A stretch of 64,000 nucleotides of DNA from IMGVR_UViG_3300027793_000052:62001-126000; one strand, 5' to 3'. Positions 3,063 through 19,861 are shown, numbered from the stretch's first letter. Numbers and translations are program-made. The notes: generated from the letters alone by a model not told the origin.

Positions 3063-3728
3063 GTGAGAAATCTTATTAAATCTATTTTAAAAGAAGAATA
3101 CGAAAGGGAACCACAAGTTGGTGATAATTTGTTATGCCACACTGTTACACCTGCTTTTGAACCTTATTTAACAGTAAATAAAACATATAGAGTAATTGAT
3201 GTAACATATTTTGATAATAGATTAGAGGTTTTAGTTATAAAAGACGATACTGGTATAAATCGAATGTTTACAATAAAACCAGTAATGGGGCATTCTTATA
3301 AAACATGGTTCCATTTATTAGATGATATTGATGATGAATATTTTTTTGAAAATATGTCGGAATCTGAAGAGGGTGATTTTGATTGGGTGGGTGATATCAT
3401 TGAAAAATCCAACATGTGGGAAACATTACCAAGAAATGGAAATTATATATTGTTTTATTTTTATCCAAAAATATCTTCAGAACAATTTAAAAAATATGTA
3501 ATCCCAATTTTATTAGAACAAGACATTAGAATTGAAAGTTCTGCGTCACGTAGTGGTATGGATCATCTAGAAATACATCCTAGTACACGTATACAATATA
3601 ATAATAAACTTGTTGCCTTGTTTGGTGATGTTGAATATTTCGATAAAGATGAAGAGGGATTTATTAAACAGTTATCAGAAGACGGTTCAACACCTATAAA
3701 CGGTAGAGAATTTTTTAACATACCTTAA
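3063..3728 (+). CDS. leader-bearing two-module protein (putative head-internal protein)
   Basis: GATATTTATA upstream; MRNLIKSILKEE leader; internal FFENMSE-SEEGDFDWVGDII linker. Confidence 0.7.
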   Translation: MRNLIKSILKEEYEREPQVGDNLLCHTVTPAFEPYLTVNKTYRVIDVTYFDNRLEVLVIKDDTGINRMFTIKPVMGHSYKTWFHLLDDIDDEYFFENMSESEEGDFDWVGDIIEKSNMWETLPRNGNYILFYFYPKISSEQFKKYVIPILLEQDIRIESSASRSGMDHLEIHPSTRIQYNNKLVALFGDVEYFDKDEEGFIKQLSEDGSTPINGREFFNIP

Positions 3729-3746
3729 ACAAATCTTTTAAAAACT

Positions 3747-3790
3747 AAAAACCCCCAATCTAATATTACATAGATGTGGGGGTTTTGTTT
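3747..3790. terminator. intrinsic terminator, probably bidirectional
   Basis: AAAAACCCCCAATCTA...TAGATGTGGGGGTTTT hairpin. Confidence 0.7.
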
Positions 3791-4010
3791 GCCGATAGAT
3801 TTATTCACATGAAAGGGAACCTTTGTTGACACCGTAAGGTAGGTGTGACAAGAGGGTTTTATCGATGTTATAATCGAGATCGGTCTTGTTTGTGTTTATA
3901 ACACGTGTTAAGGGAATCGGTGGCTTTTGGGTTAAGGTGCCGTGATCGTTGATTCCCGTGTGGATGATCAGTCCACTGATTAAACCTTGTGAGAGTGTGA
4001 AAGTTCTCCA
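3791..4010. ncRNA. candidate structured ncRNA A
   Basis: no ORF; ~43% GC; hairpins ACACC/GGTGT, GGGAATC/GATTCCC, GTGGA/TCCAC, TCGAT/ATCGA. Confidence 0.4.
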
Positions 4011-4049
4011 ATTTTTTTATTTTAACTATTGTGAAGTTTAATAAAAATA

Positions 4050-4305
4050 CTATGACCCGTTAAAAAAAGAACAACATCTTTGAACACCACGATTGCTTTT
4101 ACTTTCCCTGTTTTTAGAGAGGTTTCAGCCTGTGTCAGTCAATTATCGGTTTCACGATGGTTCAGGACTTAGCTTCCTCTGTGGTAAACATTTACAGTTT
4201 TTATGGTGTTACAGTTTTTATTTATGAGTGGTGTCATGTCGGATGGTCGTGTTACTCTTTACTCGGGAGATTTAGGACCTTTACTTTCCACTCATTCACT
4301 TCTTC
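4050..4305 (-). ncRNA. candidate structured ncRNA B
   Basis: no ORF; minus-strand TAACTTTG promoter at 4305-4312; inverted repeats 4224-4231/4288-4295, 4083-4089/4204-4210, 4118-4122/4176-4180. Confidence 0.45.
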
Positions 4306-4438
4306 AAAGTTAAACATTCTTTTTTAAACTATCAAGAGGTTTTTAAAAATTATTTTTTTTATTTTCCCCTTACCGTTATCAGGTTGTTTAACTTAACACA
4401 ACAAAGATATGTAATTTATTTCATACCGTCAACAAAAT
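4305..4438 (-). promoter_or_regulatory. two tandem minus-strand Bacteroidota-type promoters
   Basis: CAAAGTTA (4305-4312) and CAAAGATA (4402-4409) read TAnnTTTG on the minus strand; no ORF downstream. Confidence 0.5.
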
Positions 4439-4529
4439 CTTTGTTTTTTTTTTATTGTTGTGTTTTTATGTCAAATAACTTGTACAAATATATAAACAAT
4501 TTTTAACATAGACAAGATATTTATTGTAA

Positions 4530-5948
4530 ATGGAAAAAGAAATTTTAGATTTTATCTTTCAAAGTGGTGGTATTGGTTTACAGTTCTACAATCCTGAAGA
4601 ATATAATAATGAAGGTATTGTTTATACTATTATAGATTCTGATGAAAAGTATATTGATTTACAGTGGGAAGACGATGAAGAAATTTACTATAATAGTGAA
4701 CCTTGGCACGTTTTTTTATCACATTTAGAGAGTGGTTTTTATGTTATTAAAAATATGGATTTCTTATGCCAAACTATGGGTGTTGATTTAGATATTGATG
4801 ACGTTTTTGGTTCCTTAAATGAAAATGAATCGTCACATATAGTCGGTAATATAGAAAGATTATTACAAGAATGGAATTGGGTTGTGATGCCTGTGTCAGA
4901 CATCACAGAAGAACAGTTCCAAGAATTACAATTATATCTATACTCAAAAGGTATATATTGGCAAAGTGGTGGTGATGATGTTAGAAGTATGCCACCTGAT
5001 TTGGGTTGGATATATATCGGAAGATACCCGTATTATAATGGTAGGCCACCACATGCACAAAGAGCAACCATAGGTTGGACATTTTACCAAGATGGTATAT
5101 GGAGACCAGAAGAGGATCCAAGTTACGCTGAAGACTATAGATTATGGAATCCTAAATATAAAATAGTTAGTTATTACGATATTATTTTAGACGATGATGA
5201 TTTAGATATGGATGATGTTTTTGGTTCCTTGAATGAAGGAACTTATCAACCTATTTTAAATTTGAGGTTTGACCCACCATTGAGAAATGAATGGGAGTTA
5301 CTTGAAGTAATGAAAGTAATTCAAAGAAATTACGACGATGTCACTTGGCGGTCAGGAGGTATACCAACTAATTTACCTTATTTGGATCAGATATGGGAAG
5401 ATCCTTCAGAGGGTATTTGGTATATAACAATTGGTTTTTTTAAATCAAATCCGAAGAATATAACTTACACATCCGGTGATATAGATGACCCGTCTATATC
5501 AGATGAGGAACATCATATGTATAAACATTTAAATGGAAGAGAATGGGTTAGAAGTCACGACTTTGATGCGGATGAAACTAGTGATATGTTTGGTCCTTTA
5601 ATTGAGACGAATGAATTTGATTGGGTTGGTGATATAATTGATGATGATGCTAATAGATTTTCAAAAATACCAAGTTATAATCATGAAAGATATATATTAC
5701 GTTTTTCACAACCTATGCTTGCTAGTGATGTTATGGATTTATTAAAGTTTTTAAAAGAAATTGGTTGGGATGTTGGTGACAATATTGTGCGTGATTATAA
5801 TTTTGATGATTTAGTTGAATACTCTTCAAATGGAACTGGTTATATACATTTGAGGCCTAATGGTAAAGTTACTTATGCCGATGATGTTAAATTATTTTCA
5901 GATTATACCGACATTAAACTTGATACTGTCAGACAAATATGGGTATAG
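4530..5948 (+). CDS. four-module acidic protein (putative polyprotein)
   Basis: ATATTTAT upstream; linkers LDIDDVFGSLNE, LDMDDVFGSLNE, FDADETSDMFGPLIE. Confidence 0.75.
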   Translation: MEKEILDFIFQSGGIGLQFYNPEEYNNEGIVYTIIDSDEKYIDLQWEDDEEIYYNSEPWHVFLSHLESGFYVIKNMDFLCQTMGVDLDIDDVFGSLNENESSHIVGNIERLLQEWNWVVMPVSDITEEQFQELQLYLYSKGIYWQSGGDDVRSMPPDLGWIYIGRYPYYNGRPPHAQRATIGWTFYQDGIWRPEEDPSYAEDYRLWNPKYKIVSYYDIILDDDDLDMDDVFGSLNEGTYQPILNLRFDPPLRNEWELLEVMKVIQRNYDDVTWRSGGIPTNLPYLDQIWEDPSEGIWYITIGFFKSNPKNITYTSGDIDDPSISDEEHHMYKHLNGREWVRSHDFDADETSDMFGPLIETNEFDWVGDIIDDDANRFSKIPSYNHERYILRFSQPMLASDVMDLLKFLKEIGWDVGDNIVRDYNFDDLVEYSSNGTGYIHLRPNGKVTYADDVKLFSDYTDIKLDTVRQIWV

Positions 5949-5969
5949 ATAATTAAAATTTTTTTTATC

Positions 5970-5997
5970 AAAATCCCTCCAGTGTGAGGGATTTTTT
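5970..5997 (+). terminator. intrinsic terminator
   Basis: AAAATCCCTC-CAGTGT-GAGGGATTTTTT. Confidence 0.75.
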
Positions 5998-6010
5998 GTA
6001 TATTTGTTTT

Positions 6011-6292
6011 ATGGAAACTAAATCATATAAAGTTGGTGGTTATCTTTATTGTATCAAACCTGTTATAATGAAAAACGGTAAACTACAAGGTAAAGCTGTG
6101 ACCAAAGTTGGTAAACACTATAAGATATTAGATGTAACGAAAAAAAGGTTTTACATAAGGGATGATAATAAACAATGTCATTCATTTGATTTTGATGGTT
6201 ATAGGGAATGGTTTATACATACCGAAAAAATGATTAGAGGTGTTAATAAAATTGTTGATGAAATTATCGACAACGATGTTTTTTGGGAATAA
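6011..6292 (+). CDS. hypothetical SH3-like protein
   Basis: start re-assigned to ATG 6011 after TATATTTG; similar to modules in 3063 and 25499. Confidence 0.6.
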   Translation: METKSYKVGGYLYCIKPVIMKNGKLQGKAVTKVGKHYKILDVTKKRFYIRDDNKQCHSFDFDGYREWFIHTEKMIRGVNKIVDEIIDNDVFWE

Positions 6293-6315
6293 ATTTATTA
6301 TATTATATATAAAAA

Positions 6316-6510
6316 ATGGAAAATAACGAAAAAAATATAGGTTGGTCTAAAGATAAAGCTGAAAAATCTAAACAAGAATTACTAACTGAATTAAAAAAAG
6401 AATACGGTATCTCAGATGATAATTTAACTTGGGTGGATAAAATGTTGACTGAAATAATTCAAGAACAGGATGATAAGTTAAAACAAAATAAAAATGAGAA
6501 AAAGAGGTAG
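6316..6510 (+). CDS. hypothetical protein
   Basis: ORF. Confidence 0.55.
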   Translation: MENNEKNIGWSKDKAEKSKQELLTELKKEYGISDDNLTWVDKMLTEIIQEQDDKLKQNKNEKKR

Positions 6511-6766
6511 GACAATGTATGTATCACAAGATGTTGATGTGGAAATCTATTTTGATGATATCAGGAATTACGTAAATGACTACGCATCTGAGGATGAGTT
6601 AAAAATATTGGCCAAAGATTTGGAAAAAAATTATTTGGGACAACGTAATGTTGAGGTAAAAACCTTAGAAGATGAATTTAAATTAGAATTACTAATGTTA
6701 GCTTTTAACAAGTACTCATTATCAGAAATAGAAAATAAATTGGGTACAAAATTTGATTTAAGTTAA
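6494..6766 (+). CDS. hypothetical protein
   Basis: ORF in operon. Confidence 0.6.
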   Translation: MRKRGRTMYVSQDVDVEIYFDDIRNYVNDYASEDELKILAKDLEKNYLGQRNVEVKTLEDEFKLELLMLAFNKYSLSEIENKLGTKFDLS

Positions 6767-6770
6767 AATT

Positions 6771-7025
6771 ATGAAATTCGAAATAGGTGACAGAGTTAAG
6801 AAAAAGAACGGTGGCTTATTTTACTGCACACAAGAAGAATGTGGTACCATTGTAGGGTTTAGTGACCATGGTTCGGATCCTTGGGTCCACATAAAAGGTG
6901 AATATTATATGATAGATGGAATTAAGCAGATAAACCACCACAATCCTAGATTTTTGGTGAAAGTTGAAAAAATAAATTTTTGTGAAAAAAATATTAAAAA
7001 AATAAAAATTACCTCATGTGATTAG
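6771..7025 (+). CDS. small KOW-like protein with basic C-tail
   Basis: MKFEIGDRVKK...NIKKIKITSCD. Confidence 0.6.
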   Translation: MKFEIGDRVKKKNGGLFYCTQEECGTIVGFSDHGSDPWVHIKGEYYMIDGIKQINHHNPRFLVKVEKINFCEKNIKKIKITSCD

Positions 7026-7052
7026 AGGATTATCGGAAATGGATATAAATAT

Positions 7053-7325
7053 ATGAAAAAACATTTAAAAGAATGGTTTGATTTATTTTGGATATGGGGA
7101 CCAATGTTATTAATAATATTGGTTCTATATGGTAACATGTATTATACATCACATTATTGTAAAGAATACACATATAAGTCAATTTGTAGAGAGTGTGCTG
7201 AATGGAAGACTACAGATAATGGTCACACAGGTAGGTATAGGAGAGAGTGGACGGAATGTGTTCGTTGGGTTGATTACGAATGTGAGTTAACAGATGATTC
7301 TTGTGGGTGTGTTAAATTAAAGTAA
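7053..7325 (+). CDS. membrane-anchored Cys-rich protein
   Basis: one TM helix followed by 7 Cys. Confidence 0.6.
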   Translation: MKKHLKEWFDLFWIWGPMLLIILVLYGNMYYTSHYCKEYTYKSICRECAEWKTTDNGHTGRYRREWTECVRWVDYECELTDDSCGCVKLK

Positions 7326-7487
7326 TTATTTATTATTATTTTTGTGGTAATTTATAATATCTTGTTTTACCATAGGTAATATACTTTTTAGTTTATCTGA
7401 CCAACTTTTTTCTCGTTCCTCTTTTGACGGTATGTTCAAATATCTACATTTTCTTTATCTTTGGTGTTATCTTTATTTTTTAACATG

Positions 7488-8111
7488 TCATTTAAGTTTT
7501 GGTAATATTGATAATAATCTTTCTTCCCATTTTTTATTAATTTCCTCGATAGGTGGGATGTCTAAGTACTCAGTTTCCGTTGTTTCATTTTCTTGGATAT
7601 TATCAACCAATTCCATTACCCAAAAATCAGTACCATCGGTATTTTTACCTTTTTTTGTTAGTTTATACATAAATTCATTTATAAATATTTTTGTAATTTC
7701 ATCATATCTAACTAAAGAGTTATTATCTAAAACTTCATGGGTCGTTCTAATAACTTTGTTAGGCTTAATATTTGTTAATAGTCTTCTAGTTAACCCCAAA
7801 ATTATAGATATAACCATTCTTTTATTTTTAATACTATTAGGTATATATCTACTAACCTCATCTCTTTTTAACATAAAACCTGTTATAGGTTTATTGTTAG
7901 TATCAACAACCATAAAACAATATGAATATTTACTGATATCGTTATTTATTTTTTCAAAACCAACGAATAAGTATAATTTATCCCCATTATTATCATCTTT
8001 AGATATTAATGTAGTAAACACACCTTCTTCCGGTGAATAGACATTAGATTCCCACTCATCTATTTTAGAAACCATTTCCTCAATTAATATCTTCTTAATT
8101 AAGTCTCTCAT
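7488..8111 (-). CDS. leader-bearing hypothetical protein
   Basis: MRDLIKKILIEE leader; ATATTTAT upstream on the minus strand. Confidence 0.7.
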   Translation of the reverse strand: MRDLIKKILIEEMVSKIDEWESNVYSPEEGVFTTLISKDDNNGDKLYLFVGFEKINNDISKYSYCFMVVDTNNKPITGFMLKRDEVSRYIPNSIKNKRMVISIILGLTRRLLTNIKPNKVIRTTHEVLDNNSLVRYDEITKIFINEFMYKLTKKGKNTDGTDFWVMELVDNIQENETTETEYLDIPPIEEINKKWEERLLSILPKLK

Positions 8112-8148
8112 GTTATTAAATATAAATTGATTTTATATTTTATAAATA

Positions 8149-8180
8149 TTATATTTGTATAATGAAAGGTACATTAAACT
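8149..8180 (+). repeat. 32-bp exact repeat (promoter plus gene start), copy 1; copy 2 at 11319-11350
   Basis: TTATATTTGTATAATGAAAGGTACATTAAACT present at both sites. Confidence 0.85.
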
Positions 8181-8191
8181 ATAATTAAAAT

Positions 8192-8674
8192 ATGAAAAAA
8201 ATAAAAATTTGGGCTTCGGCCTTAGCATCAATGTTGTTAATAACATCTTGTTCAGAAAATTATTCTAACGGTGAAAGAATTGGTTTGGTTACACAATTCT
8301 CCAAAAGTGGTATAATATGGAAATCATGGGAAGGTCATTTGAACATGACCCAAACTGGGATGAACTCTTCAACACCATTTGATTTTTCTATTGATAATGA
8401 CAATCAAGATGAAAATTTGGTAAAATCATTGGATAGTGCTGCTAATTACGGTTGGAAGGTTAAAATTGTTTATCATGAAACAGCTGGGTATAATTGGTTC
8501 AGAAATCGTGGTGAGACAAGTCATTTTGTGACCAAAATGGAAGTTTTAGATAGAAATCCTATCGCTACGGCATTTGGTAATAGCACGTCCCCTGAAAGTA
8601 AATCAGGTTGTAACTGTAAAACAACTGGTAAAGTAATTGACACAATTTATGTTGTGATTGATAAAACAAAATAA
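8192..8674 (+). CDS. conserved Bacteroidota-type lipoprotein
   Basis: lipobox ITSC; YSNGERIG...FSKSG..WKSWEG motif. Confidence 0.65.
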   Translation: MKKIKIWASALASMLLITSCSENYSNGERIGLVTQFSKSGIIWKSWEGHLNMTQTGMNSSTPFDFSIDNDNQDENLVKSLDSAANYGWKVKIVYHETAGYNWFRNRGETSHFVTKMEVLDRNPIATAFGNSTSPESKSGCNCKTTGKVIDTIYVVIDKTK

Positions 8675-8677
8675 AAC

Positions 8678-8791
8678 ATGAAAAAAATAACAATTTTGTC
8701 TTTATTAATTTGTCTATTGGCAAGTTCTTGTAAAAATTATTACTATCAACCATGTCCTGCATATGGAAAGGTTGAAACCAAAAAACCTTAA
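8678..8791 (+). CDS. small lipoprotein (37 aa, not in track)
   Basis: MKKITILSLLICLLASSC...QPCPAYGK. Confidence 0.55.
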   Translation: MKKITILSLLICLLASSCKNYYYQPCPAYGKVETKKP

Positions 8792-8833
8792 TTTTTACTT
8801 TTTATATTTAATTATTTTTCATATCATTAAAAT

Positions 8834-9376
8834 ATGAATATATTTGTTTTGGATAAGGACGTTAAAAAATGTGCTGAATATCACTGTGACAAACATTTGG
8901 TAAAAATGATTACAGAACACAATCAAATATTAGGTACAATATCTTATATCCGACGAGGTATAAAAAATAAAAAAGAAATTACAGAAGATTTTATATATAA
9001 AAATTTTCAAGGGTTTCCAAGGCAAAAAGATGATAAACCTTTTCCATATGGAATTGGTTTTGTTAACCATCCATGTACAAAATGGGTTAATACATCATCA
9101 AGTAATTATAAATGGTTGACGGAATTAACTCATGAGATGTGTAAAGAATACACCAAAAGATACGGTAGGAAACATGCTGGTGAGGATATTAATTTTTGGT
9201 ACCGTGACAACATGCCAGAAATACCTGATATTGGTTTGACACAGTTTTCACAGGCAATGCCTGACGATTGTAAAATGTCAGACCCAATAGAAGGTTATAG
9301 AAATTATTATAAAAAATATAAAGTAAGATTTGCCAAATGGCAACATGGTCAAACACCAAAATGGTACCTAGTATGA
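8834..9376 (+). CDS. pyrimidine dimer DNA glycosylase / endonuclease V-like protein
   Basis: MNIFVLD...HCDKHLVKM..E..Q, NHPC..W, F.QAMP, YRNYY. Confidence 0.8.
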   Translation: MNIFVLDKDVKKCAEYHCDKHLVKMITEHNQILGTISYIRRGIKNKKEITEDFIYKNFQGFPRQKDDKPFPYGIGFVNHPCTKWVNTSSSNYKWLTELTHEMCKEYTKRYGRKHAGEDINFWYRDNMPEIPDIGLTQFSQAMPDDCKMSDPIEGYRNYYKKYKVRFAKWQHGQTPKWYLV

Positions 9377-10735: not shown

Positions 10736-11311
10736 ATGGGACTAATAGAACACGCAAAATTAGAATTAGAGATGGCTGGTTTATTTTCTGGTGAAGGTGA
10801 CTTTTATGATGGTATGACAGGTAAAGCAGTCATGGAATTAATAGAAGTATTTTCCAAACAAGGACATTCAGGGATGTCAGCACCCATTGTCACCGACTTA
10901 TTTCGTAAATTGGCTAATTATGAACCATTACAACCTATCACTGGTAAAGATGAAGAGTGGGGTGATGTGAGAGATTTAGGTGATGGGCGATCTTGGTATC
11001 AAAATAAGAGATGTTCGGCTTTATTCAAAGACGGTAAAGACGGAAGACCTTATTATATTGATGCTATTGTTAAAAGAGACCAAAGAGGTATAACATGGAG
11101 TGGAATGGCTTGGTTAAATGAAGAAGATTGGTTAAATGGAGATAGAACCAAAATGATAGATAAACGGGGTTATGTTAAATCATTTCCATTTACACCTAAA
11201 ACCTTTTATATTGATGTAAGGGATGTTGAAGTTGCAAAAGATGATTGGGAAAGTTTTATTGTTGACCCATCACAACTAGATGAAGTTAGAGAATATTATG
11301 ATTTAAAATAA
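10736..11311 (+). CDS. conserved phage hypothetical protein
   Basis: HAKLELEMAG, FSKQGHSGMSA, QNKRCSALFK. Confidence 0.7.
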   Translation: MGLIEHAKLELEMAGLFSGEGDFYDGMTGKAVMELIEVFSKQGHSGMSAPIVTDLFRKLANYEPLQPITGKDEEWGDVRDLGDGRSWYQNKRCSALFKDGKDGRPYYIDAIVKRDQRGITWSGMAWLNEEDWLNGDRTKMIDKRGYVKSFPFTPKTFYIDVRDVEVAKDDWESFIVDPSQLDEVREYYDLK

Positions 11312-11331
11312 TTTTTCCTTATATTTGTATA

Positions 11332-11706
11332 ATGAAAGGTACATTAAACTTAAAAGACACTGGGTGGTTTGTATTATATTGGGATAGAGATCCGCATTAT
11401 TTCGGACCACAAGGAATGTTGAAACAGAGGGTTAAAGAAATATCTGTTCATCGAGAAAGTCTATCCAATCCATTCCTATCAACATATTGGGTTGATGGTA
11501 GAGAAGTTGAATTTGAAATCATTTATGAAAGTGATACTGATGGTTGGTTTGATGGGAAATCGGCTAAGATAATTCACGATGATTATATTGGTGAAGATGG
11601 TTGGGATAGAATTGTAAGGGAATTATCTGAACAAGATATAAATGGTGTTTACGAAACTATGAAATGGTTAAAGGAAAATTATAACCCACCAAAAAGGAAA
11701 GAATAA
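11332..11706 (+). CDS. hypothetical protein
   Basis: own TATATTTG promoter. Confidence 0.65.
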   Translation: MKGTLNLKDTGWFVLYWDRDPHYFGPQGMLKQRVKEISVHRESLSNPFLSTYWVDGREVEFEIIYESDTDGWFDGKSAKIIHDDYIGEDGWDRIVRELSEQDINGVYETMKWLKENYNPPKRKE

Positions 11707-13383: not shown

Positions 13384-13384
13384 A

Positions 13385-13810
13385 ATGAAACCAAAATTTA
13401 ATGTTGGGGATAAATTGGAAGCCAACCAATTTGAAAGAGAACAATATGGAATTGAATATGTTACCATCACATCCATCAATGAGGTTGGACAGGTTTATTA
13501 TTGCGAGGCAGATTGGAACAATAATAAAATATATTTGGGCCATTTTTTTGATGAGGCAAAGATTTATGAAGATGGTTATGATGTATACTGCCCCATTTGC
13601 ACGGGCTGTGGTGAAGAAGGTTGTTGTAGCCCATTAATGTGCAAACAATCACAAGACGGTCATTATTGTGAAAGTTATTTAAGGGATTTAAAATTTGGCT
13701 ATAAAATGTATAATGACATTTATGATTTAATCCCAAAAGATGAAGAAACAAAGAAAAAATTGGATGAGATATTCGATAAAAATTATGAACGATATTATAC
13801 CCCAAAATAA
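13385..13810 (+). CDS. KOW-like plus Cys-cluster protein
   Basis: MKPKFNVGDK N-terminus; CPICTGCGEEGCC...C...C. Confidence 0.65.
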   Translation: MKPKFNVGDKLEANQFEREQYGIEYVTITSINEVGQVYYCEADWNNNKIYLGHFFDEAKIYEDGYDVYCPICTGCGEEGCCSPLMCKQSQDGHYCESYLRDLKFGYKMYNDIYDLIPKDEETKKKLDEIFDKNYERYYTPK

Positions 13811-13849
13811 AAACCAAAGCTTTTTATCTTATAAGAATATTTATAAGAT

Positions 13850-14332
13850 ATGAGAAATCTCATCAAAAAAATCATAAAAGAAGAACTTAAAAAAGATAAA
13901 ACCATAACCTGCAACAATTGCGGATGGTCTTGGAAATTATCTGAAGCAGGAAATGATCCTTTTAATTGCCACAAATGCTTATCCAACAACAATCAAGTTA
14001 CAATAAAAGAAGAAACAAAAGAAAAATACCCAATTTCAATTGGTGATGTTTTTAGGGTTAATAAGGAAAACATATTGATTATGATAGAATCAATCAAATG
14101 CAACCCCAAAAAAGCTAGGGTAATGACAAAACATACAATATTTGGGAACCATGAAATTTTCCATGATGGTTGCGATGTTTATTATCTCAGAAGCATAGAC
14201 GGTGGTGAAACATGGTATGATGATGATGAATCTAAAACAGAACTTAATTGGATTCCGGTCATAATTTCAAACGGCCATTGGAAATTGTTACATGGTGGGT
14301 CAGAAGATATTGGAGATTTTTTCCCAGAATAG
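13850..14332 (+). CDS. leader-bearing Zn-ribbon plus KOW-like two-module protein
   Basis: ATATTTAT upstream; MRNLIKKIIKEE; CNNC/CHKC; internal TIKE-E junction. Confidence 0.7.
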   Translation: MRNLIKKIIKEELKKDKTITCNNCGWSWKLSEAGNDPFNCHKCLSNNNQVTIKEETKEKYPISIGDVFRVNKENILIMIESIKCNPKKARVMTKHTIFGNHEIFHDGCDVYYLRSIDGGETWYDDDESKTELNWIPVIISNGHWKLLHGGSEDIGDFFPE

Positions 14333-14336
14333 TTAA

Positions 14337-14366
14337 TTGCCAAATAAAATAAAATTCTTATATTTG
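14337..14366 (+). promoter_or_regulatory. Bacteroidota-type (early) promoter
   Basis: TTGCCA-N16-TATATTTG. Confidence 0.65.
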
Positions 14367-14370
14367 TGGT

Positions 14371-14712
14371 ATGATAATAACAATAATCATATCATCCGTT
14401 ATATTAAACATTGTTTTAAGCACAATGGTTTATTCTTTAACCAAAGAAAAACCCAAAATAATTTATAAGGAAAAACCTGTGGAGAAAATAGTATATAAGG
14501 ATAAAATTATATACAAGGATAAGATTGTGGAAAAAATTGTCTACAAAGACAAACCCATACACCAATTTATTCCAAAGGTGGAACCAAAAGTTAGCAAAGA
14601 AAAACAAGAACTTTTGGATGCCCTTAATGAATTAAAGAAGAAAAAGAAAAAATCCAAGAAGGACCAAGAAAACATATACACAATAGAAAAAGTTTTACCA
14701 AACCTTAAATAA
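14371..14712 (+). CDS. membrane-anchored protein with IVYKDK repeats
   Basis: N-terminal TM; repeated EKIVYKDK. Confidence 0.65.
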   Translation: MIITIIISSVILNIVLSTMVYSLTKEKPKIIYKEKPVEKIVYKDKIIYKDKIVEKIVYKDKPIHQFIPKVEPKVSKEKQELLDALNELKKKKKKSKKDQENIYTIEKVLPNLK

Positions 14713-14844
14713 TTTAAACCATGACAGTAATATTATTATTATTTATTTTCATAACCTTGGCATCAATCAATAACAAAATTAAAAGATAAAATGTAGAAAG
14801 TTTAAAATAATTTTATATCTTTGTAACATTAAGAAATAGAAATA

Positions 14845-15249
14845 ATGACAAACGAATTTATCCCATACGAAGAAGCATTAGCCCTAAAAGAATTAGGGTT
14901 TAATGATGAATGTTTTGGATTTTATGATGACCAATATAATAAAGATAATGGTTTATATTTAAACGATAGTATAAACTTAAAAGGGAGATTTATTTATACA
15001 AAAGCACCAACATTCTCACAAACATTTAGATGGTTTAGAGATGAAAAAAGTATATCTGGAGAAGTTTACTCTGGAGATTTTGGAGGATGTATAGAATATA
15101 GCTTCCATATAAGAGATTTATATACTGAAAAAGAAATATTTGATAACTTTTTTGGGGCTGGAGGTTCTTATAGTGGTACATTCAATACTTATGAAGAAGC
15201 AGAACTTGCTTGTCTTAAAAAATTAATTGAAATAGTTAAACCTAAATAA
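14845..15249 (+). CDS. conserved flavophage-type hypothetical protein
   Basis: FIPYEEALALKELGF.D.CFGFY, APTFSQ.FRWFR, YEEAE.ACL.KLIE. Confidence 0.7.
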   Translation: MTNEFIPYEEALALKELGFNDECFGFYDDQYNKDNGLYLNDSINLKGRFIYTKAPTFSQTFRWFRDEKSISGEVYSGDFGGCIEYSFHIRDLYTEKEIFDNFFGAGGSYSGTFNTYEEAELACLKKLIEIVKPK

Positions 15250-15307
15250 TATGAATAAAGAATTAAAGTTTGATGAACCTTGTTTTGGGTTTTATAATGA
15301 ATTATGT

Positions 15308-15337
15308 AAAACCCTGAGATAATCCTCGGGTTTTTTT
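15308..15337 (+). terminator. intrinsic terminator, near-identical to 17088-17114
   Basis: ACCCTGAG-ATAATC-CTCGGGTTTTTTT. Confidence 0.75.
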
Positions 15338-15403
15338 ATTTCTAGGGACGTAGTCCGGGTATATATTTACACTATCCACATAAATCATTAGATTTACAAT
15401 AAT

Positions 15404-15637
15404 ATGGAATTAAAAGTCGGCAAAACATATATAACAAATAACCATCCTGAAATAGATAGTGATTTGCATAATAAGAGATTTATGGTTATAAGTTCTGAGA
15501 AAATACAAGATACACAAATTTACCTATTAAAGTTTGACCATTGTGAAAAACAACGTATGATAAATGAAGTTAATGTTAGTAAATATATCACAGAATCTAT
15601 AGAACCATTAAGACATTTAAAACTACATAAGATATGA
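15404..15637 (+). CDS. small KOW-like protein with basic C-tail
   Basis: MELKVGKTY...IEPLRHLKLHKI. Confidence 0.6.
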   Translation: MELKVGKTYITNNHPEIDSDLHNKRFMVISSEKIQDTQIYLLKFDHCEKQRMINEVNVSKYITESIEPLRHLKLHKI

Positions 15638-15807
15638 AAAAAGAAAATCATAAAAAAGATTTATCCCAACAAAAAGAAGAATTATATAAGAAGTGGGAAA
15701 ATACAGGAATATTCGATAATCTAAGAGGTGGTTTAAAAGAAAATATTTCAAAGTTATATGAATGTTGTGCTTCATCAATTATTTTATCTGGGGATACAAA
15801 GAAATAA
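15634..15807 (+). CDS. 57-aa protein resembling the N-terminal arm of T4-type major capsid proteins (not in track)
   Basis: ATGA-coupled; KKWENTGIFDNLRGGLKENISKLYECCAS. Confidence 0.5.
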   Translation: MKKENHKKDLSQQKEELYKKWENTGIFDNLRGGLKENISKLYECCASSIILSGDTKK

Positions 15808-15867
15808 TATATGGATGAATTTAAATATGACACATTTGAAGAATGGTTTGATAAAGATAAGTAAATT

Positions 15868-16146
15868 ATGAAGGTAATAAATGTAGAATATCCAACAAAC
15901 CCCAAACAATTATACGAAGGGGAGTTTGTCAAATACTCAACCCAAACAAGTAGATATCCACAATCACTTGGTGGTATATGGTATTTTATGGATGAGGTAA
16001 AAAAGAGTTGTGAAAAATTGGGTTACCCTGGCATATTCTTATACAATGTAGAAGAAATGGCAGATGTACCTATAAACGATAGACTAGAGAAATCGGTATA
16101 TATTAGATGGGATTTTATTAGAACACATAACAGAAGAAATGGTTGA
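15868..16146 (+). CDS. hypothetical protein
   Basis: ORF. Confidence 0.55.
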   Translation: MKVINVEYPTNPKQLYEGEFVKYSTQTSRYPQSLGGIWYFMDEVKKSCEKLGYPGIFLYNVEEMADVPINDRLEKSVYIRWDFIRTHNRRNG

Positions 16147-16254
16147 TGCCTATGTTAAAGAAAAATCACAAGAGTTTGAATGGTCATTTAAAACCTTTCT
16201 TATGGTTAAATTGGGATATATTGGCATGGATGATAATGGTAAATGGATTAAGGA

Positions 16255-16452
16255 ATGAAATACTTTAAGAACAGTGAAGTAAAAAAGGCACTAAGAGAAA
16301 GAAACATACATATCATAAATAATTGGTTACACTTAAATTTTAAATGTGGCCCACAGGCAACAGTTACATATGATAATGATTTCCCAATCACCTTACAAGG
16401 AAAATATGTTGGCGTTGAATGTAACTGTGGTAAAACATTTTATGAAGAATGA
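16255..16452 (+). CDS. small Cys-containing protein
   Basis: C...CNCG. Confidence 0.55.
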   Translation: MKYFKNSEVKKALRERNIHIINNWLHLNFKCGPQATVTYDNDFPITLQGKYVGVECNCGKTFYEE

Positions 16453-16691
16453 AAATCCGTAAACATCTAAAAACCTTATGGGATGATGAAATAAAAATCA
16501 TAACCAATCATGAAGAATTTATGCAGTATGGTAATGAAGTTTGTAGAAGGGGAAAGAATTTCTGGAATGACCCAAATCGAACAACAATAAGTTTCGATGA
16601 ATTTGATAATATTCCTTATGACTGGGATAAAGAATATCTAAAAATAGTAAAAAGAAGGAATCACGAAACCGTATATAGAATAAAGTATTAA
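16449..16691 (+). CDS. hypothetical protein
   Basis: ATGA-coupled ORF. Confidence 0.55.
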   Translation: MKIRKHLKTLWDDEIKIITNHEEFMQYGNEVCRRGKNFWNDPNRTTISFDEFDNIPYDWDKEYLKIVKRRNHETVYRIKY

Positions 16692-16711
16692 TAATAGATA
16701 TTTATTCTTAT

Positions 16712-17098
16712 ATGAGAAACCTAATCAGGAAAATATTAAAGGAAGAAGTTATTAAAAGTTTTCTAATGGAACTTGATTCTTTAAATATACCCAAAGAAGA
16801 TTATATCATATTTGGTTCAGGCCCCATGGCAATTAAAGGATTACTTGAACCTTCAGACCTTGATGTTGTGGTAAGAGAAAATGTATATAAGGAAATGTTC
16901 GGTAATAAGGAACCAATAAGAATCGGTAATATAGAATTATGTTATACATGGCCTGATATGGATATAGAAGAATTATTTAATAATGTAGAATGGTATGATG
17001 GTTATCCATTTGCCTCCATTAGTATGGTAAGACAATATAAGAAACAAATGAATCGACAAAAAGACATAGAAGATTTAAAGTTATTAGACCCTGAGTAA
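16712..17098 (+). CDS. leader-bearing minimal nucleotidyltransferase (pol-beta superfamily-like)
   Basis: MRNLIRKILKEE; IIFGSGPMA...SDLDVVV (hG[GS]...DxD); RQKDIEDL. Confidence 0.65.
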   Translation: MRNLIRKILKEEVIKSFLMELDSLNIPKEDYIIFGSGPMAIKGLLEPSDLDVVVRENVYKEMFGNKEPIRIGNIELCYTWPDMDIEELFNNVEWYDGYPFASISMVRQYKKQMNRQKDIEDLKLLDPE

Positions 17099-17114
17099 TC
17101 CTCGGGGTTTTTTT
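17088..17114 (+). terminator. intrinsic terminator
   Basis: ACCCTGAG-TAATC-CTCGGGGTTTTTTT. Confidence 0.75.
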
Positions 17115-17511
17115 ATGTTATAGATGTATCGTTAGACCTGAAGTCTACTCGGACTGATGTACTGAAAACTAACACTTATTAGTACCATAATTATATTCAT
17201 GTGTGGATACCCTCGATCCGGTCAATAGGCAACGCTATTTGCCAAATGGAGTAAAAATCTCGATCTTGGTGGGGGTATGTGGTAAAAAGTGGTAAATAAG
17301 GGTAATTTATGACACGAAATGTTTTTTATGCCACGGTAAGTACTATAAGAAATCCATTGAAAAAGTTTGCCAAACCAAAAGGGAACTGACCCCTCCGCGA
17401 ATTTCCTGACAAATTTTCAGGCTAGTCCTCCCCATTTTGTCATGTGACAATATGACATGTTGAGAAAAGCCAGTGTACCGTAATTGGGTTTTACAGTACA
17501 CCGACATTTTG

Positions 17512-17640
17512 TCATCCTACTTGTACTTGTATTACACCCTTCTCTGATCGGGATGTAGCGTATATTAGACTTGGCGTCCAATATTCAACACCTTTAACAA
17601 CATATTTGTAAAGGTAATAAGGTTCATTTATTGTTTCCAT
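17512..17640 (-). CDS. 42-aa hypothetical protein (not in track)
   Basis: METINEPYYLYKYVVKGVEYWTPSLIYATSRSEKGVIQVQVG; promoter-like TATCTTTA upstream. Confidence 0.5.
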   Translation of the reverse strand: METINEPYYLYKYVVKGVEYWTPSLIYATSRSEKGVIQVQVG

Positions 17641-18024
17641 ATATTAAAGATAATAAGAATTTTTCTAACTATCAAGATATTTATATTATATACGTTAGGT
17701 TTTTCTACATGTTTTATTACCTATCCCGAAAAAAATGTAGGACAAGAGGTTAATAGGATTTATCCCGTCCCAAAACTATTAAGACATATATAAACAATAA
17801 ATCACTTATGATTAAGGTTTATTTAAATTATTTCTCCTGGTAGAGATTAGATAACAGTTCTGAGGGACTTCTTTATGATGGTTTAAAAAAAATCGATAAA
17901 TTATAAGGTTTTAAAGTTTTTTTTGATACACCTAGAGATGGGTGTTTTGTTGTGCTCATCTGTACAGATTGTATGTATTCTTAATATTAAATTTTATTTT
18001 ATTATCTGAATATTTATTATTGAT

Positions 18025-18831
18025 ATGAAAAATCTAATTAAAAAGATATTGAAGGAAAATGATTTTAATCCAGATGATTTTAGTTGGGTTAATTTGGAAT
18101 TGGAACCAATTAGAGATCGTAAACATAGATCGGAAATTATTGAAGATACAATAGCCAAAGTTAAAGAATATAAGGGTTGGAGAATATATAAGGATAAATT
18201 TAATGGTGTGGTTTATTGGGATGGTACTGAAGGTTACACTGGTATGGCGACACCTGAATGGGATGAGGCTTTTAAAATACCTGTTGATATAAGCTATCAT
18301 AATGATTATGATAATGTAACTGTTATACATACCCCTGAATTTAAATACGTTGTGGAGTTACAGGAATGGTATAGTAAAAATTATTTTGAGATTGTGTATA
18401 AAGTACTAACCGATTATATAAACCAAGATGAGGTACCTGGTATAATTGAAACAAAAAGTTTAATTAAAAAGATATTGAAGGAAAATGAATGGGAATGGGC
18501 AGAAGATTTGATTGGTGGTGATAGTTTATATGCCAAAGCCATGTCATTAATTCCTGAAAACCTTAATGAATATAATAGATGTCTTATTTTATTTGAGAGG
18601 GAATTAGATTGGGATGAAGCCCAAATTTTATTAAAAGTCCTTAGGGAGAAAGGTTGGAAGATAACTGAAGTTTCGGATGATAGTAGAATTAAATGTATTC
18701 TTAAATATAGTAAAACTCACGAAGGATATGTTAATTTAAAAAATCCTTTTATTTCATTTGGGGATTCTAGGTATACGTACAACAATGTTAATTCTGTTAA
18801 GTGGGAAGATGTTTTAAAAATTAAAATTTAA
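18025..18831 (+). CDS. leader-bearing protein made of two fused leader genes
   Basis: MKNLIKKILKEN at the start and KSLIKKILKENEWEW internally (18451-18500). Confidence 0.75.
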   Translation: MKNLIKKILKENDFNPDDFSWVNLELEPIRDRKHRSEIIEDTIAKVKEYKGWRIYKDKFNGVVYWDGTEGYTGMATPEWDEAFKIPVDISYHNDYDNVTVIHTPEFKYVVELQEWYSKNYFEIVYKVLTDYINQDEVPGIIETKSLIKKILKENEWEWAEDLIGGDSLYAKAMSLIPENLNEYNRCLILFERELDWDEAQILLKVLREKGWKITEVSDDSRIKCILKYSKTHEGYVNLKNPFISFGDSRYTYNNVNSVKWEDVLKIKI

Positions 18832-18969
18832 ATTTTTTATTGCCAATTAAATTATTTTCCTTATCTTTGTGGTATATTGATATGATGTTATAATCATATC
18901 TTGCCACTAACAAATCTTCTTTAGGGGCCGTGTATACTCCAACACAATCAATTTAAAAAATTTCATTAT

Positions 18970-19156
18970 AAGGCAGGGTCTTAGCTGTTGGCCTCTCACC
19001 ATCTCTCATAGTATAAAGGTACGACTTTTATTTCAATTGGCCAAAAAAACAACATGACAATGTGTCACTTTTTTTTAAAAAAGGCAGGTGGCGTTCTGGT
19101 TGCCTCTCACATCCTCTGTCACAATGTAAAGGTACTAATAATTTTTTAATTGGCAA
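18970..19156 (-). repeat. two tandem promoter plus short GC-rich RNA units
   Basis: units 18970-19044 and 19081-19156 share AAGGCAGG, GCCTCTCAC, TAAAGGTAC and AATTGGC. Confidence 0.65.
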
Positions 19157-19174
19157 TGAATATTTATAAGATAT

Positions 19175-19861
19175 ATGAAAAATTTAATTAAAAAGATATT
19201 AAGGGAAAATGAATGGGAATGGGCGGAGGAAACATTGGACCGAGCAGTTGATCCTTATAGAATGGATGTAAATGAATTAGTTTATTTTCTTAATCAATTT
19301 TTTCAACAAAATAAATCCCCAAGATTTAATAGAACATATGTGGCAGAATATGATAGAGGTACCTTTACCATTGGTGATGAAACAGGATTATATGTTTCAA
19401 TGTTAGATACGGATGAAACTTTTTATTATGCCATAAAATCTTTAAAAAGAAGCATAATAAGTCTAACCAATAACAGAGAACTATTGGATGAATATCAGGA
19501 TTTATATGATACATTAATACCTTTGATAAAAGAAGATATAATGGAACAGGCAAACGATATGGACTGGTTTAATATCGATGATATGCCAGAACCAAAAGGA
19601 ATTGCCCTAGCAAATATAATTGAAGAATATTTCAAAGATAATAATTTACCTTATCATATTATGATAAGACAAGATAATGCCGTTATATACATCAAAGATA
19701 CCAATTTTATATATTTTAGCGGATGGACCGAATTATTCACCATGGATAATATTATTAATGATATAATGATTGATTTAGATTCCTTACAATCATCAAAAAG
19801 CATTAATAGATGGAATATCTTATACAACAATCTTAAATCTTTATTTGATAAATTAAAATAA
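19175..19861 (+). CDS. leader-bearing protein with two tandem homologous modules
   Basis: MKNLIKKILRENEWEW; internal PLIKE-DIMEQANDMDWF junction. Confidence 0.75.
   Translation: MKNLIKKILRENEWEWAEETLDRAVDPYRMDVNELVYFLNQFFQQNKSPRFNRTYVAEYDRGTFTIGDETGLYVSMLDTDETFYYAIKSLKRSIISLTNNRELLDEYQDLYDTLIPLIKEDIMEQANDMDWFNIDDMPEPKGIALANIIEEYFKDNNLPYHIMIRQDNAVIYIKDTNFIYFSGWTELFTMDNIINDIMIDLDSLQSSKSINRWNILYNNLKSLFDKLK

What the first reader, a model, noticed from the sequence alone, without database searches (positions are those of the whole stretch)
3063..19861. Shared N-terminal leader (M[RK]NLIKKILKE) on unrelated cargoes: candidate capsid-targeting sequence
Seen: near-identical leaders ending in (L/I)xE on unrelated proteins at 3063, 8111(-), 13850, 16712, 18025 and 19175. 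Looser variants occur at 26593, 27474, 37389, 46944, 56030(-) and 61707. Each leader gene (or, for 27474, its operon) lies behind ATATTTAT, never the host-type TAnnTTTG. Established: T4 internal proteins carry a ~10-aa capsid-targeting leader (e.g. IPIII MKTYQEFIAE) that the gp21 protease removes after Glu at (L/I)xE sites. Inference: this phage uses a portable leader to load a diverse cargo set (nucleotidyltransferase, HAD, DHH, Zn-ribbon, unknown domains) into the head for injection.
Basis: partly seen in the sequence, partly recalled or inferred. Interest (0 to 1): 0.8.

Follow-up and report, generated by a model that had tools for sequence, protein, structure and literature searches.

The report
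Shared address-tag on phage proteins
A large uncultured T4-like phage puts the same 11-residue tag, ending in the cutting motif of its own head protease, on many unrelated acidic proteins. This most likely marks them for loading into the phage head, as T4 does with its internal proteins, though nothing here shows loading or cutting directly.

Summary
The core observation is real. Six ORFs (3063+, 8111-, 13850+, 16712+, 18025+, 19175+) start with M[KR][ND]LI[KR][KS]I[LI]xE, and a seventh copy lies inside the 18025 protein. The six 'looser variants' are not the same motif.

The leader is the first half of a ~25-residue module: a basic amphipathic helix ending (I/L)xE, an acidic stretch, then [DE]F[DE]W. 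This module heads at least 584 protein clusters in metagenomes, almost always at residue 1. It has 59 matches in viral contigs and none in 596 Gb of cellular genomes.

In multi-domain relatives every domain junction reads (L/I)(N/K)E|S-acidic-FDW.

Walking about 12 kb past the window reaches a T4-type head module: TerL, gp20 portal, a gp21-family prohead protease (Pfam S77, 8e-30), a scaffold-like protein and a gp23 capsid protein. Leader genes share the ATATTTAT promoter motif with these head genes.

Best reading (about 0.5): a T4-style capsid-targeting propeptide plus protease sites, greatly expanded and extended to polyprotein-like arrays.

Main caveat: the cargo is very acidic (median pI 4.5), whereas T4 internal proteins are basic, and there is no proteomic evidence.

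I rate it a new variant of a known kind.

The parts
3063..3728 (+). Leader gene 1 (221 aa, GTG start). Leader MRNLIKSILKE at 3063-3095. Two modules joined by the junction NMSE|SEEGDFDWVGDII at 3354-3401.
   Evidence: leader 18.9 bits; junction 6.2 bits
7488..8111 (-). Leader gene 2 (207 aa). Leader MRDLIKKILIE at 8111-8079.
   Evidence: 28.5 bits
13850..14332 (+). Leader gene 3 (160 aa). Leader MRNLIKKIIKE at 13850-13882, then a CxxC...CxxC zinc-ribbon-like segment.
   Evidence: 28.8 bits; homologue with a leader in L084
16712..17098 (+). Leader gene 4 (128 aa). Leader MRNLIRKILKE at 16712-16744, on a minimal nucleotidyltransferase-fold domain (GSG...DLD).
   Evidence: distant homologues P0163 and P0164 lack the leader; AF2 pLDDT 87; top fold matches are nucleotidyltransferases, prob 0.96, E 0.04
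18025..18831 (+). Leader gene 5 (268 aa, two modules). N-terminal leader at 18025-18057. Internal leader TKSLIKKILKE at 18451-18483, preceded by GIIE.
   Evidence: 34.7 and 28.3 bits; L042 carries the same two modules as two genes split exactly at the leader; AF2 gives helices at 2-11 and 143-153
19175..19861 (+). Leader gene 6 (228 aa). Leader MKNLIKKILRE followed by NEWEWAE, at 19175-19230.
   Evidence: 37.3 bits; 83% DNA identity to 18441-18506 (D1)
4530..5948 (+). Multi-module protein (472 aa) without the N-terminal leader. Its domain junctions all end in (L/I)xE: DDVFGSLNE| (4781-4823 and 5195-5237) and GPLIE|TNEFDWVGDII (5598-5645). It lies behind ATATTTAT.
   Evidence: D7, D13
24039..26173 (+). 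Two further multi-module proteins behind ATATTTAT (24039-25046 and 25499-26173), with junctions PIDE|S, PINE|S and NLNE|N. In 25499 the VGDNLVCH domain follows NLNE|N; in 3063 the same domain follows the leader ILKE|E.
3050..3057 (+). ATATTTAT promoter-like motif ending 5-7 nt before the start codon. Others at 13837-13844, 16698-16705, 18010-18017 and 19160-19167, and at 8142-8149 on the minus strand.
   Evidence: The same motif precedes TerL, portal, protease and the scaffold-like gene outside the window.
39109..40398 (+). Tail-fibre-like gene behind the same ATATTTAT motif (39086-39093). Used to assign the promoter class to virion genes.

Best explanation
The leader is a T4-type capsid-targeting propeptide. 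It is an 11-residue basic amphipathic helix (hydrophobic M1, L4, I5, I8, L9) ending in (I/L)-x-E. The proposal is that it docks the protein onto the scaffolding core of the assembling prohead, and that the phage's gp21-family prohead protease then cuts it off after the Glu.

The same (L/I)(N/K)E|S site recurs at every domain junction of multi-domain relatives. One N-terminal tag could therefore carry a string of ~110-residue acidic modules into the head, where the protease separates them. The freed modules would then stay in the head and enter the host with the DNA, like T4 IPI-III and Alt.

Shown here: the motif and its portability, the protease and T4-type head genes in the same genome, the shared promoter class, and the equivalence of leader and junction. 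Inferred only: binding to the core, cleavage, retention in the head and injection. The role of the conserved acidic-FDW segment after the cut site is unexplained.
For: 1. Portable tag. Six strict copies sit on unrelated proteins in the window. 584 clusters among 1.84 billion representatives match at E<=1e-3, and the best match starts within the first two residues in about 90% of the 150 listed. 35 unrelated cargo clusters were found. Almost no Pfam family appears among 150 members.

2. Add-on to known enzymes. The 16712 nucleotidyltransferase family has leaderless distant homologues. A PolyA_pol/CCA-adding enzyme next to the protease carries the leader.

3. Protease present. Pfam Peptidase_S77 at 8.1e-30 and 104 bits against a cut-off of 27. 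It is 34% identical to T4 gp21, E 2e-27, with the His and Ser motifs kept. It lies in a module with Portal_T4 (1.4e-74), a Gp23 capsid protein and TerL.

4. Same grammar as genuine T4 propeptides read from NC_000866: gp24 MAKINELLRE|S, IPII/III MKTYQEFIAE|A, gp22 MLKEQLIAE|A. This phage's capsid protein has LISE|TSTAGGGS aligned with gp24 LLRE|STTTNSNS.

5. Junctions. 112 of 121 internal FDW motifs have [LIVM]xE within 12 residues upstream, against 21% at random positions. P3 is L or I in 86%, P2 is N or K, and P1' is Ser in 82%. 15 of 16 junction-bearing ORFs start with the leader or a short variant of it.

6. Leader equals junction. The 769-aa PolyA_pol protein reads ...KPNINE|NVVRKKINMDLP internally. 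Its 510-aa orthologues start MKNLIRKILKE|EVVRKKIHMDLP. The fused 18025 protein corresponds to two genes in L042, split exactly at the leader.

7. Promoter class shared with TerL, portal, protease, the scaffold-like gene and a tail-fibre-like gene.

8. Linkage to the head module and clade restriction. 31 of 46 loci whose protease is at least 65% identical have a leader ORF within 10 kb of the protease, against 3 of 34 in the 52-56% clade. Six leader contigs also hold the protease.

9. Suggestive avoidance of the site inside cargo. [LI]xE observed/expected is 0.96 in cargo bodies against 1.25 in other proteins of the same loci, while [LI]xD is 1.28 against 1.09.

10. Precedent. T-even internal proteins are diverse defence inhibitors that share only the targeting sequence (PMC3012670, PMC12373910, PMC5694885).
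Against: There is no proteomic, structural or biochemical evidence that any leader protein is in a virion or is cut.

Cargo bodies are very acidic: median pI 4.48, with 97% below 6. T4 IPI-III have pI 9.0-9.7 and sit on the DNA.

The leader shares no sequence with the T4 targeting sequence; the match is one of pattern only.

The conserved acidic-FDW segment lies after the proposed cut and has no role in the T4 model.

(L/I)xE is a short motif and is common in this A+T-rich proteome, at about 2.6% of positions.

The depletion signal is weak. Offset +3 is also low, and the bootstrap intervals only just separate.

Some junction-type proteins in the window (4530, 24039, 25499) lack the N-terminal leader.

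In the AF2 model of 16712 the leader is the start of a continuous helix 2-23, not a detached peptide.

The nearest cultured relative by capsid protein, Flavobacterium phage immuto, has the protease but no leader in the 150 of 160 kb scanned. The leader is therefore not required by this kind of head.
Confidence: 0.5

Rival explanations
1. The proteins are targeted to the prohead core and cut, but for assembly rather than delivery. The acidic modules would act as core or scaffold filler, like T4 gp22, gp67 and gp68. They would be degraded or expelled before DNA enters and would not be injected.
For: The strong acidity of all modules resembles acidic T4 core proteins more than basic internal proteins. 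The gene directly after the protease carries its own conserved leader, MKKxIKLTExDIEKLVKKIIKE, on variable bodies. The 493-aa scaffold-like protein is also very acidic.
Against: The cargoes include enzyme folds (nucleotidyltransferase, PolyA_pol/CCA-adding enzyme, a SprT-like protease, one beta-lactamase-fold). It is hard to see such folds as filler. Folded ~110-residue modules could not leave through capsid pores. The huge diversity (584 clusters) fits an arms-race repertoire better than a structural role.
Confidence: 0.15
2. The proteins are cytoplasmic modular proteins unrelated to the capsid. The helix and the acidic-FDW segment would be a conserved linker or short binding motif that ties many small domains to a common partner, to a membrane or to each other. 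The (L/I)xE would be incidental.
For: The FDW segment is as conserved as the helix and is not explained by the T4 model. A basic amphipathic helix followed by an acidic stretch could serve membrane binding or oligomerisation. Some junction proteins lack the leader. AF2 merges the leader with the first domain helix.
Against: This does not explain why P3, P1 and P1' of the junction match the specificity expected of the co-encoded S77 protease. It also does not explain why the leader is confined to a clade with that head module and is enriched beside it. Nor does it explain the shared promoter class with head genes, or why junction and leader are interchangeable at the same boundary.
Confidence: 0.2
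3. The signal acts at the nucleic-acid level. The conserved first 33 nt would be a translation-start or initial-transcribed element for near-leaderless late mRNAs, or a recombination joint that shuffles gene cassettes, in the way conserved motifs do in T-even tail-fibre and IP loci.
For: The promoter motif ends only 5-7 nt before the ATG, so the mRNAs may be almost leaderless. Codon 8 is ATA in 56 of 61 copies against 41% genome usage. Gene fusion and fission occur exactly at the leader. Promoter-plus-start cassettes of the other class are also duplicated (D2 and D3).
Against: The other codons vary synonymously at about genome-wide frequencies while the residues stay fixed, with six different Leu codons at position 4. 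More than half of the IMG/VR copies have no promoter motif in front. Internal junctions keep the peptide pattern without any start site. The early promoter class is equally close to its start codons, so closeness is not special to leader genes.
Confidence: 0.07
4. The leader is a recognition tag for the phage's own Clp-type AAA+ chaperone (49681-52203, minus strand), marking the proteins for unfolding, disaggregation or timed removal.
For: A ClpB/ClpC-like protein with Clp_N and two AAA+ domains is encoded in the window. N-terminal tags are a common way to address Clp machines.
Against: No co-variation or linkage was tested or seen. This does not explain the internal junctions, the Glu-Ser boundary or the link with the head module.
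Confidence: 0.05

Closest known systems
T4 capsid-targeting sequence of internal proteins IPI, IPII, IPIII and Alt, and the gp24 propeptide
   Same: A 10-20-residue N-terminal peptide shared by otherwise unrelated proteins. It ends in (L/I)xE followed by a small residue. The genome has a gp21-family prohead protease and a gp20/gp22-like/gp23 head module. The genes sit in variable regions and the cargo repertoire is diverse (PMC3012670, PMC12373910).
   Different: No sequence similarity to MKTYQEFIAE. The tag is a Lys-rich helix followed by a conserved acidic-FDW segment. The cargo is acidic (pI about 4.5) rather than basic. The scale is hundreds of families, against about ten reported IPs. The same site recurs at internal junctions of polyprotein-like arrays, which has no T4 counterpart. 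Packaging has not been shown.
Propeptides of phiKZ/SPN3US-type giant phages (protease family S80)
   Same: Many head-internal 'ejection' proteins are processed by a gp21-related protease, sometimes at several sites, in a jumbo phage (PMC5694885).
   Different: Those propeptides are mostly over 100 residues long, are not shared between unrelated proteins, and are cut at S/A/G-x-E. Here the protease scores as S77, P3 is L or I, and the tag is 11 residues long.
Encapsulation peptides of bacterial microcompartments and cargo-loading peptides of encapsulins
   Same: A short amphipathic helix is enough to address unrelated enzymes to the inside of a protein shell. This comparison rests on my own knowledge of those systems and was not tested here.
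   Different: No microcompartment or encapsulin shell gene was seen in about 95 kb of this genome. Those peptides are not removed by a protease. The shell here would be a gp23 capsid.
Viral polyproteins cut at conserved junction motifs
   Same: Multi-domain ORFs have a short conserved motif at each domain boundary, and a virus-encoded protease has matching expected specificity.
   Different: Polyprotein processing is not an established feature of tailed-phage accessory proteins. Here the modules also occur as separate genes, each with its own leader.

Membership tests
T4-type capsid-targeting sequence / internal-protein system | A short (10-20 aa) N-terminal peptide shared by otherwise unrelated proteins of one phage | tested here: met
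   Six strict copies in the window and at least 11 in about 110 kb of this phage. 35 unrelated cargo clusters.
T4-type capsid-targeting sequence / internal-protein system | The peptide ends in the gp21 cleavage motif (L/I)-x-E followed by a small residue | tested here: met
   ILKE, ILIE, IIKE or ILRE in all six. E11 is at least 90% conserved in 55 sequences. Junction P3 is L/I in 86% and P1' is S in 82%. This is sequence pattern only.
T4-type capsid-targeting sequence / internal-protein system | The genome encodes a gp21-family prohead protease within a T4-type head module | tested here: met
   Peptidase_S77 8.1e-30, Portal_T4 1.4e-74, Gp23, and TerL phrog_5989 at 2.6e-29. 34% identity to T4 gp21.
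T4-type capsid-targeting sequence / internal-protein system | Expression together with head genes | tested here: inconclusive
   The ATATTTAT motif is shared with TerL, portal, protease, the scaffold-like gene and a tail-fibre-like gene. TATATTTG sits on replication and repair genes. There are no transcript data.
T4-type capsid-targeting sequence / internal-protein system | The proteins are found in proheads or virions with the leader removed | not testable with these tools
   No cultured member exists. There were no matches in GenBank phages. The nearest cultured relative lacks the leader.
T4-type capsid-targeting sequence / internal-protein system | Sequence homology of the leader to the T-even sequence (MKTYQEFIAE / MKTFKEF...) | tested here: not met
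   Comparison with T4 N-termini read from NC_000866 shows only the M-K start, the length and the (L/I)xE ending in common.
T4-type capsid-targeting sequence / internal-protein system | Cargo is small, basic and DNA-associated (typical of IPs, but not required for targeting) | tested here: not met
   Median pI 4.48, with 97% below 6. T4 IPI-III have pI 9.0-9.7.
phiKZ/SPN3US-type (S80) head propeptides | Cleavage at S/A/G-x-E and long, protein-specific propeptides | tested here: not met
   P3 is L/I/V/M, the tag is 11 residues long and it is shared between proteins. The protease matches Pfam S77.
Microcompartment or encapsulin cargo peptides | A co-encoded shell protein (BMC-H/P or encapsulin) | tested here: inconclusive
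   Pfam hits on record for the called genes of the flanks and scans of selected window proteins show none. Only about 95 of 318 kb was seen.

The most novel reading that the evidence does not exclude
A lineage of T4-like, probably Bacteroidota-infecting, large phages has turned the capsid-targeting principle into a general delivery system. One N-terminal tag loads strings of acidic ~110-residue modules into the head. The prohead protease cuts them apart at (L/I)(N/K)E|S junctions, and the freed modules are injected as a large, fast-evolving effector arsenal. If so, the tag is a sequence label that picks out injected proteins directly from metagenomes: hundreds of families, nearly all without a known domain.
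Probability: 0.3. Interest if true: 0.85.

Novelty: new variant of a known kind. Interest (0 to 1): 0.68.

Why it matters
Injected phage proteins act before any phage gene is expressed. In T4 they are specific inhibitors of host restriction systems, but outside the T-even phages they can hardly be recognised from sequence.

If this tag is a capsid address, it identifies hundreds of candidate injected proteins in uncultured aquatic phages. It would also show that the T4 targeting principle is old and widespread within the T4-like head lineage. It would add a new twist, polyprotein-like cargo cut apart inside the head. And it would provide a short peptide that might be used to load foreign proteins into such capsids.

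Even if the capsid reading is wrong, the bipartite module is an undescribed element. It marks domain boundaries in a very large set of 'dark' phage proteins.

Tried and rejected
- Megablast of 25 kb of the window against GenBank phages found no match.
- tblastn of the 18025 protein, of a five-module relative and of a 24-residue consensus against GenBank phages found no match. The low-complexity filter may hide short hits.
- A word-indexed protein search restricted to residues 1-40 returned only the query's own cluster, so it was useless as a census.
- Pfam and PHROGs on the leader proteins gave nothing usable. Pfam on 150 leader proteins gave four single hits.
- A literature search for the peptide strings found nothing relevant.
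- The looser variants were rejected by HMM score.
- An enrichment of [LI]xE near the N-terminus of ATATTTAT-class genes (18/29 against 33/103, p=0.005) is driven by the strict leaders, so I do not use it.
- TAnnTTTG is not enriched overall (139 against 121 expected, with 7 of 100 shuffles reaching 139). Only the TATATTTG form sits in front of genes.
- AF2 of the 18025 protein was mediocre (pLDDT 62.7) and its fold search gave no significant match.
- Flavobacterium phage immuto, the closest cultured relative by capsid protein, has no leader in the 150 of 160 kb scanned.
- Rfam found nothing in the window or in the ORF-free stretches next to the leader genes.

Full report
**Observation**

The window is A+T-rich (about 29% G+C), has no tRNA genes and is densely packed with small ORFs, mostly on the plus strand. 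Two independent scans were run: a six-frame regex scan and a profile HMM built from 55 related N-termini. They agree that exactly six ORFs begin with M[KR][ND]LI[KR][KS]I[LI]xE: 3063 (GTG start), 8111(-), 13850, 16712, 18025 and 19175. A seventh copy lies inside the 18025 protein at 18451. These score 19-37 bits, and nothing else in any frame exceeds about 6 bits.

The DNA copies differ by synonymous substitutions. Across 61 distinct copies, codon choice follows genome usage at most positions; the main exception is ATA at codon 8. The peptide is therefore what is conserved.

Three of them are paralogues of a separate family (PSGNxKYL...GTKWCTT, phrog_17056) with its own N-terminus.

**Extent beyond the window**

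A degenerate DNA pattern for the leader finds 59 places in IMG/VR. All are at ORF starts, in contigs of 28-34% G+C and up to 380 kb. The same pattern finds none in 596 Gb of bacterial and archaeal genomes.

One contig, IMGVR_UViG_3300027793_000052 (317,983 bp), encodes proteins identical to those of the window. By coordinate arithmetic the window corresponds to roughly 62-126 kb of that contig.

With the first 28 residues removed, 65 leader proteins fall into 35 clusters with no detectable similarity between them.

A profile of the N-terminus, searched against 1.84 billion representative proteins, gives 584 clusters at E<=1e-3. The best match starts within the first two residues in about 90% of the 150 listed, and many proteins have 2-7 matching stretches. 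Only 4 of 150 such proteins hit any Pfam family.

**Anatomy**

Alignment shows that the leader is the first half of a bipartite module: M[KR]NLIKKILKE, then 0-6 mostly acidic residues, then [DE]F[DE]W[VIA]x[DE][IV].

In multi-domain relatives, modules are spaced about 108 residues apart (median). Each boundary reads (L/I)(N/K)E-S-(E/D)n-F-D-W. Of 121 internal FDW motifs, 112 have [LIVM]xE within 12 residues upstream, against 21% at random positions. P3 is L or I in 86%, and P1' is Ser in 82%. Fifteen of 16 junction-bearing ORFs in the fetched loci start with the leader or a short variant, M-x-[LI]KKIIKEE.

Leader and junction are interchangeable:
- The 769-aa PolyA_pol protein has ...KPNINE|NVVRKKINMDLP internally, whereas its 510-aa orthologues begin MKNLIRKILKE|EVVRKKIHMDLP.
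- The fused 18025 protein exists in L042 as two genes, split as ...EVPGIIET(stop) followed by MKNLIKKILKEE.
- In the window, the VGDNL(L/V)CH domain follows the leader in 3063 and follows NLNE|N in 25499.
- The window's other multi-module proteins (4530, 24039) use a different linker, DDVFGSLNE| or PI(D/N)E|S, that again ends in (L/I)xE.

**Genomic context**

Walking right from the window with exact-protein look-ups gave the following, in window-equivalent coordinates:

| Feature | Position | Evidence |
|---|---|---|
| TerL with a LAGLIDADG insertion | about 64.5-67.7 kb | phrog_5989, 2.6e-29 |
| T4-type portal | about 68.0-70.0 kb | Portal_T4, 1.4e-74 |
| Leader-bearing PolyA_pol protein, opposite strand | 73.7-76.0 kb | Pfam PolyA_pol on record |
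| Prohead protease | 76.06-76.87 kb | Peptidase_S77, 8.1e-30, 104 bits against a cut-off of 27 |
| Small ORFs | after the protease | gene calls, no family hit |
| 493-aa acidic protein (scaffold-like) | about 78.8 kb | position and composition |
| Capsid protein | about 80.3-82.1 kb | Pfam Gp23 |

The protease is 34% identical to T4 gp21 over 176 residues (E 2e-27), with the ELNHP and SSRG motifs conserved.

The capsid protein's nearest cultured relatives are Flavobacterium phage immuto, Microcystis phage Mel-JY01 and Pelagibacter phage HTVC008M. This is therefore a distant T4-like phage, probably of Bacteroidota.

**Comparison with real T4 propeptides**

T4 N-termini read from NC_000866 are IPII/III MKTYQEFIAE|A, gp24 MAKINELLRE|S and gp22 MLKEQLIAE|A. 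The new capsid protein has ...LISE|TSTAGGGS aligned with gp24 ...LLRE|STTTNSNS.

The literature states that T4 head-internal proteins associate with the core through a 10-20-residue targeting sequence that gp21 removes. It also states that T-even internal proteins are diverse and share only this sequence (PMC5694885, PMC3012670, PMC12373910).

**Promoter class**

ATATTTAT occurs 38 times against 24 expected, and 0 of 100 shuffles reach 38. It ends 5-22 nt before the start codons of the leader genes, the multi-module genes, the PSGN family genes and a tail-fibre-like gene.

Outside the window it precedes TerL, the portal gene, the 335-aa gene after it, the protease and the scaffold-like gene. 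The ligase, ATPase and DUF932 genes instead carry TATATTTG, the Bacteroidota-like TAnnTTTG form. Leader genes therefore belong to the promoter class of the virion genes. That this class is late is an inference.

**Clade distribution**

The protease has 418 relatives in IMG/VR. A leader ORF lies within 10 kb of the protease in 31 of 46 loci with at least 65% protease identity, but in only 3 of 34 of the 52-56% clade.

The ORF directly after the protease carries a second conserved N-terminus, MKKxIKLTExDIEKLVKKIIKE, on variable bodies.

The cultured immuto phage has the head module but no leader in the 150 of 160 kb scanned.

**Further tests**

In cargo bodies, with leaders and junctions masked, [LI]xE is at 0.96 of the expectation from composition. 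In other proteins of the same loci it is at 1.25. [LI]xD shows the opposite, 1.28 against 1.09. This suggests avoidance of the site but is not decisive, because offset +3 is also low.

Cargo bodies are very acidic: median pI 4.48, against 5.74 for controls and 9.0-9.7 for T4 IPs.

AF2 of 16712, run with 11 sequences, gives pLDDT 87 and a helix from residue 2 to 23. Its top fold matches are nucleotidyltransferases (TM1012, prob 0.96, E 0.04), which is consistent with that fold but not significant. Distant homologues of this domain lack the leader.

AF2 of 18025 is mediocre. It places short helices on both leaders and models the first module with good confidence.

**Conclusion**

The best-supported explanation is a T4-type capsid-targeting propeptide with prohead-protease sites, expanded to hundreds of cargo families and to polyprotein-like arrays. 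I put this at about 0.5, because every step after 'the motif and the protease are both there' is inferred.

The main open points are the acidity of the cargo, the unexplained acidic-FDW segment and the absence of any virion data. The rivals are listed separately with their refuting results: core filler, a cytoplasmic linker or binding motif, a nucleic-acid-level signal, and a Clp tag.

No paper in the searched library mentions the peptide. The closest precedent is the T-even targeting sequence, so I rate this a new variant of a known kind.

Noticed in passing
window 46944-48379 (+): The DHH-type phosphoesterase gene lies in two frames. After ...KIYFHQDL there is CTT TGA GGGAA CTT GAT GGT: a CTT codon followed by a stop, then a second CTT 11 nt downstream, after which the frame continues with DGVTT. 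The 11-nt insertion is present in three independent assemblies and absent from a diverged homologue (L156), which reads HQDLDGVT without a break. It could be a fixed frameshift (pseudogene), a -1 frameshift, or gene-60-like ribosome hopping with matched take-off and landing codons.
   Followed up: partly
window 29783-32065 (-): An ATP-dependent DNA ligase appears split into an N-terminal ORF (31274-32065) and a C-terminal ORF (29783-30583) by an HNH endonuclease ORF (30471-31241). The endonuclease ORF has its own ATATTTAT motif.
   Followed up: no
L060:14777-17935 (about 0.5-3.7 kb right of the window): The large terminase is 1052 aa and has a LAGLIDADG_3 hit between its N- and C-terminal terminase matches. 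It probably carries an intein.
   Followed up: no
window 27474-28433, 37389-39071, 61707-end: Three paralogues of a family with PSGNxKYLxW and GTKWCTT(S/N)KE motifs (phrog_17056, function unknown). All sit behind ATATTTAT and share the N-terminus ..IFEGRxEDxKK. The third is 923 aa and lies just before TerL.
   Followed up: partly
L064:16847-17236 and orthologues in L072-L109: The gene directly after the prohead protease has a second conserved ~22-residue N-terminus, MKKxIKLTExDIEKLVKKIIKE. It contains two (L/I)xE sites and is followed by bodies that differ completely between phages.
   Followed up: partly
window 20460-20600: An ORF-free island of 56% G+C in a 29% G+C genome. It has no Rfam match and folds no better than shuffled sequence (z = 0.2). 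Milder G+C-rich ORF-free stretches lie at 3800-4000 and 17200-17600, next to leader genes.
   Followed up: partly
window 8127-8182, 11297-11352, 14357-14391, 20733-20780: Duplicated cassettes of the other promoter class: TTATATTTGT(A/G)TAATG plus the first codons (ATGAAAGGTACAT...). The copy at 8148 opens only a 7-codon ORF before the 8192 gene.
   Followed up: no
window 57144-59360 (+): A 738-aa protein with four acidic repeats (TETEGGEEFDFGG) and two copies of a 44-residue Pro/Lys-rich segment (PKTAPTKPTTKPDVKPGTD..PPHIPPDEESAPKA). It lies in the operon that leads to TerL. No family match.
   Followed up: no
L064:12066-13202: A glutamine-synthetase-like gene (Gln-synt_C) sits inside the head gene cluster, between the portal and the protease.
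   Followed up: no
window 3061-3065: Leader gene 3063 starts with GTG. The ATG that the other copies use is present 2 nt upstream but out of frame (ATGTGAGAAAT against ATGAGAAAT), which looks like a 2-nt insertion rescued by the GTG.
   Followed up: no
window 39109-40398 and 40723-42453: Two tail-fibre-like paralogues share a GGSQTLAQTLSNGNTSGAYDI segment and a C-terminal (L)LPRMT..(Q/A)...I....G(L)I(V/L)Y.TD motif. No Pfam or PHROG hit.
   Followed up: no
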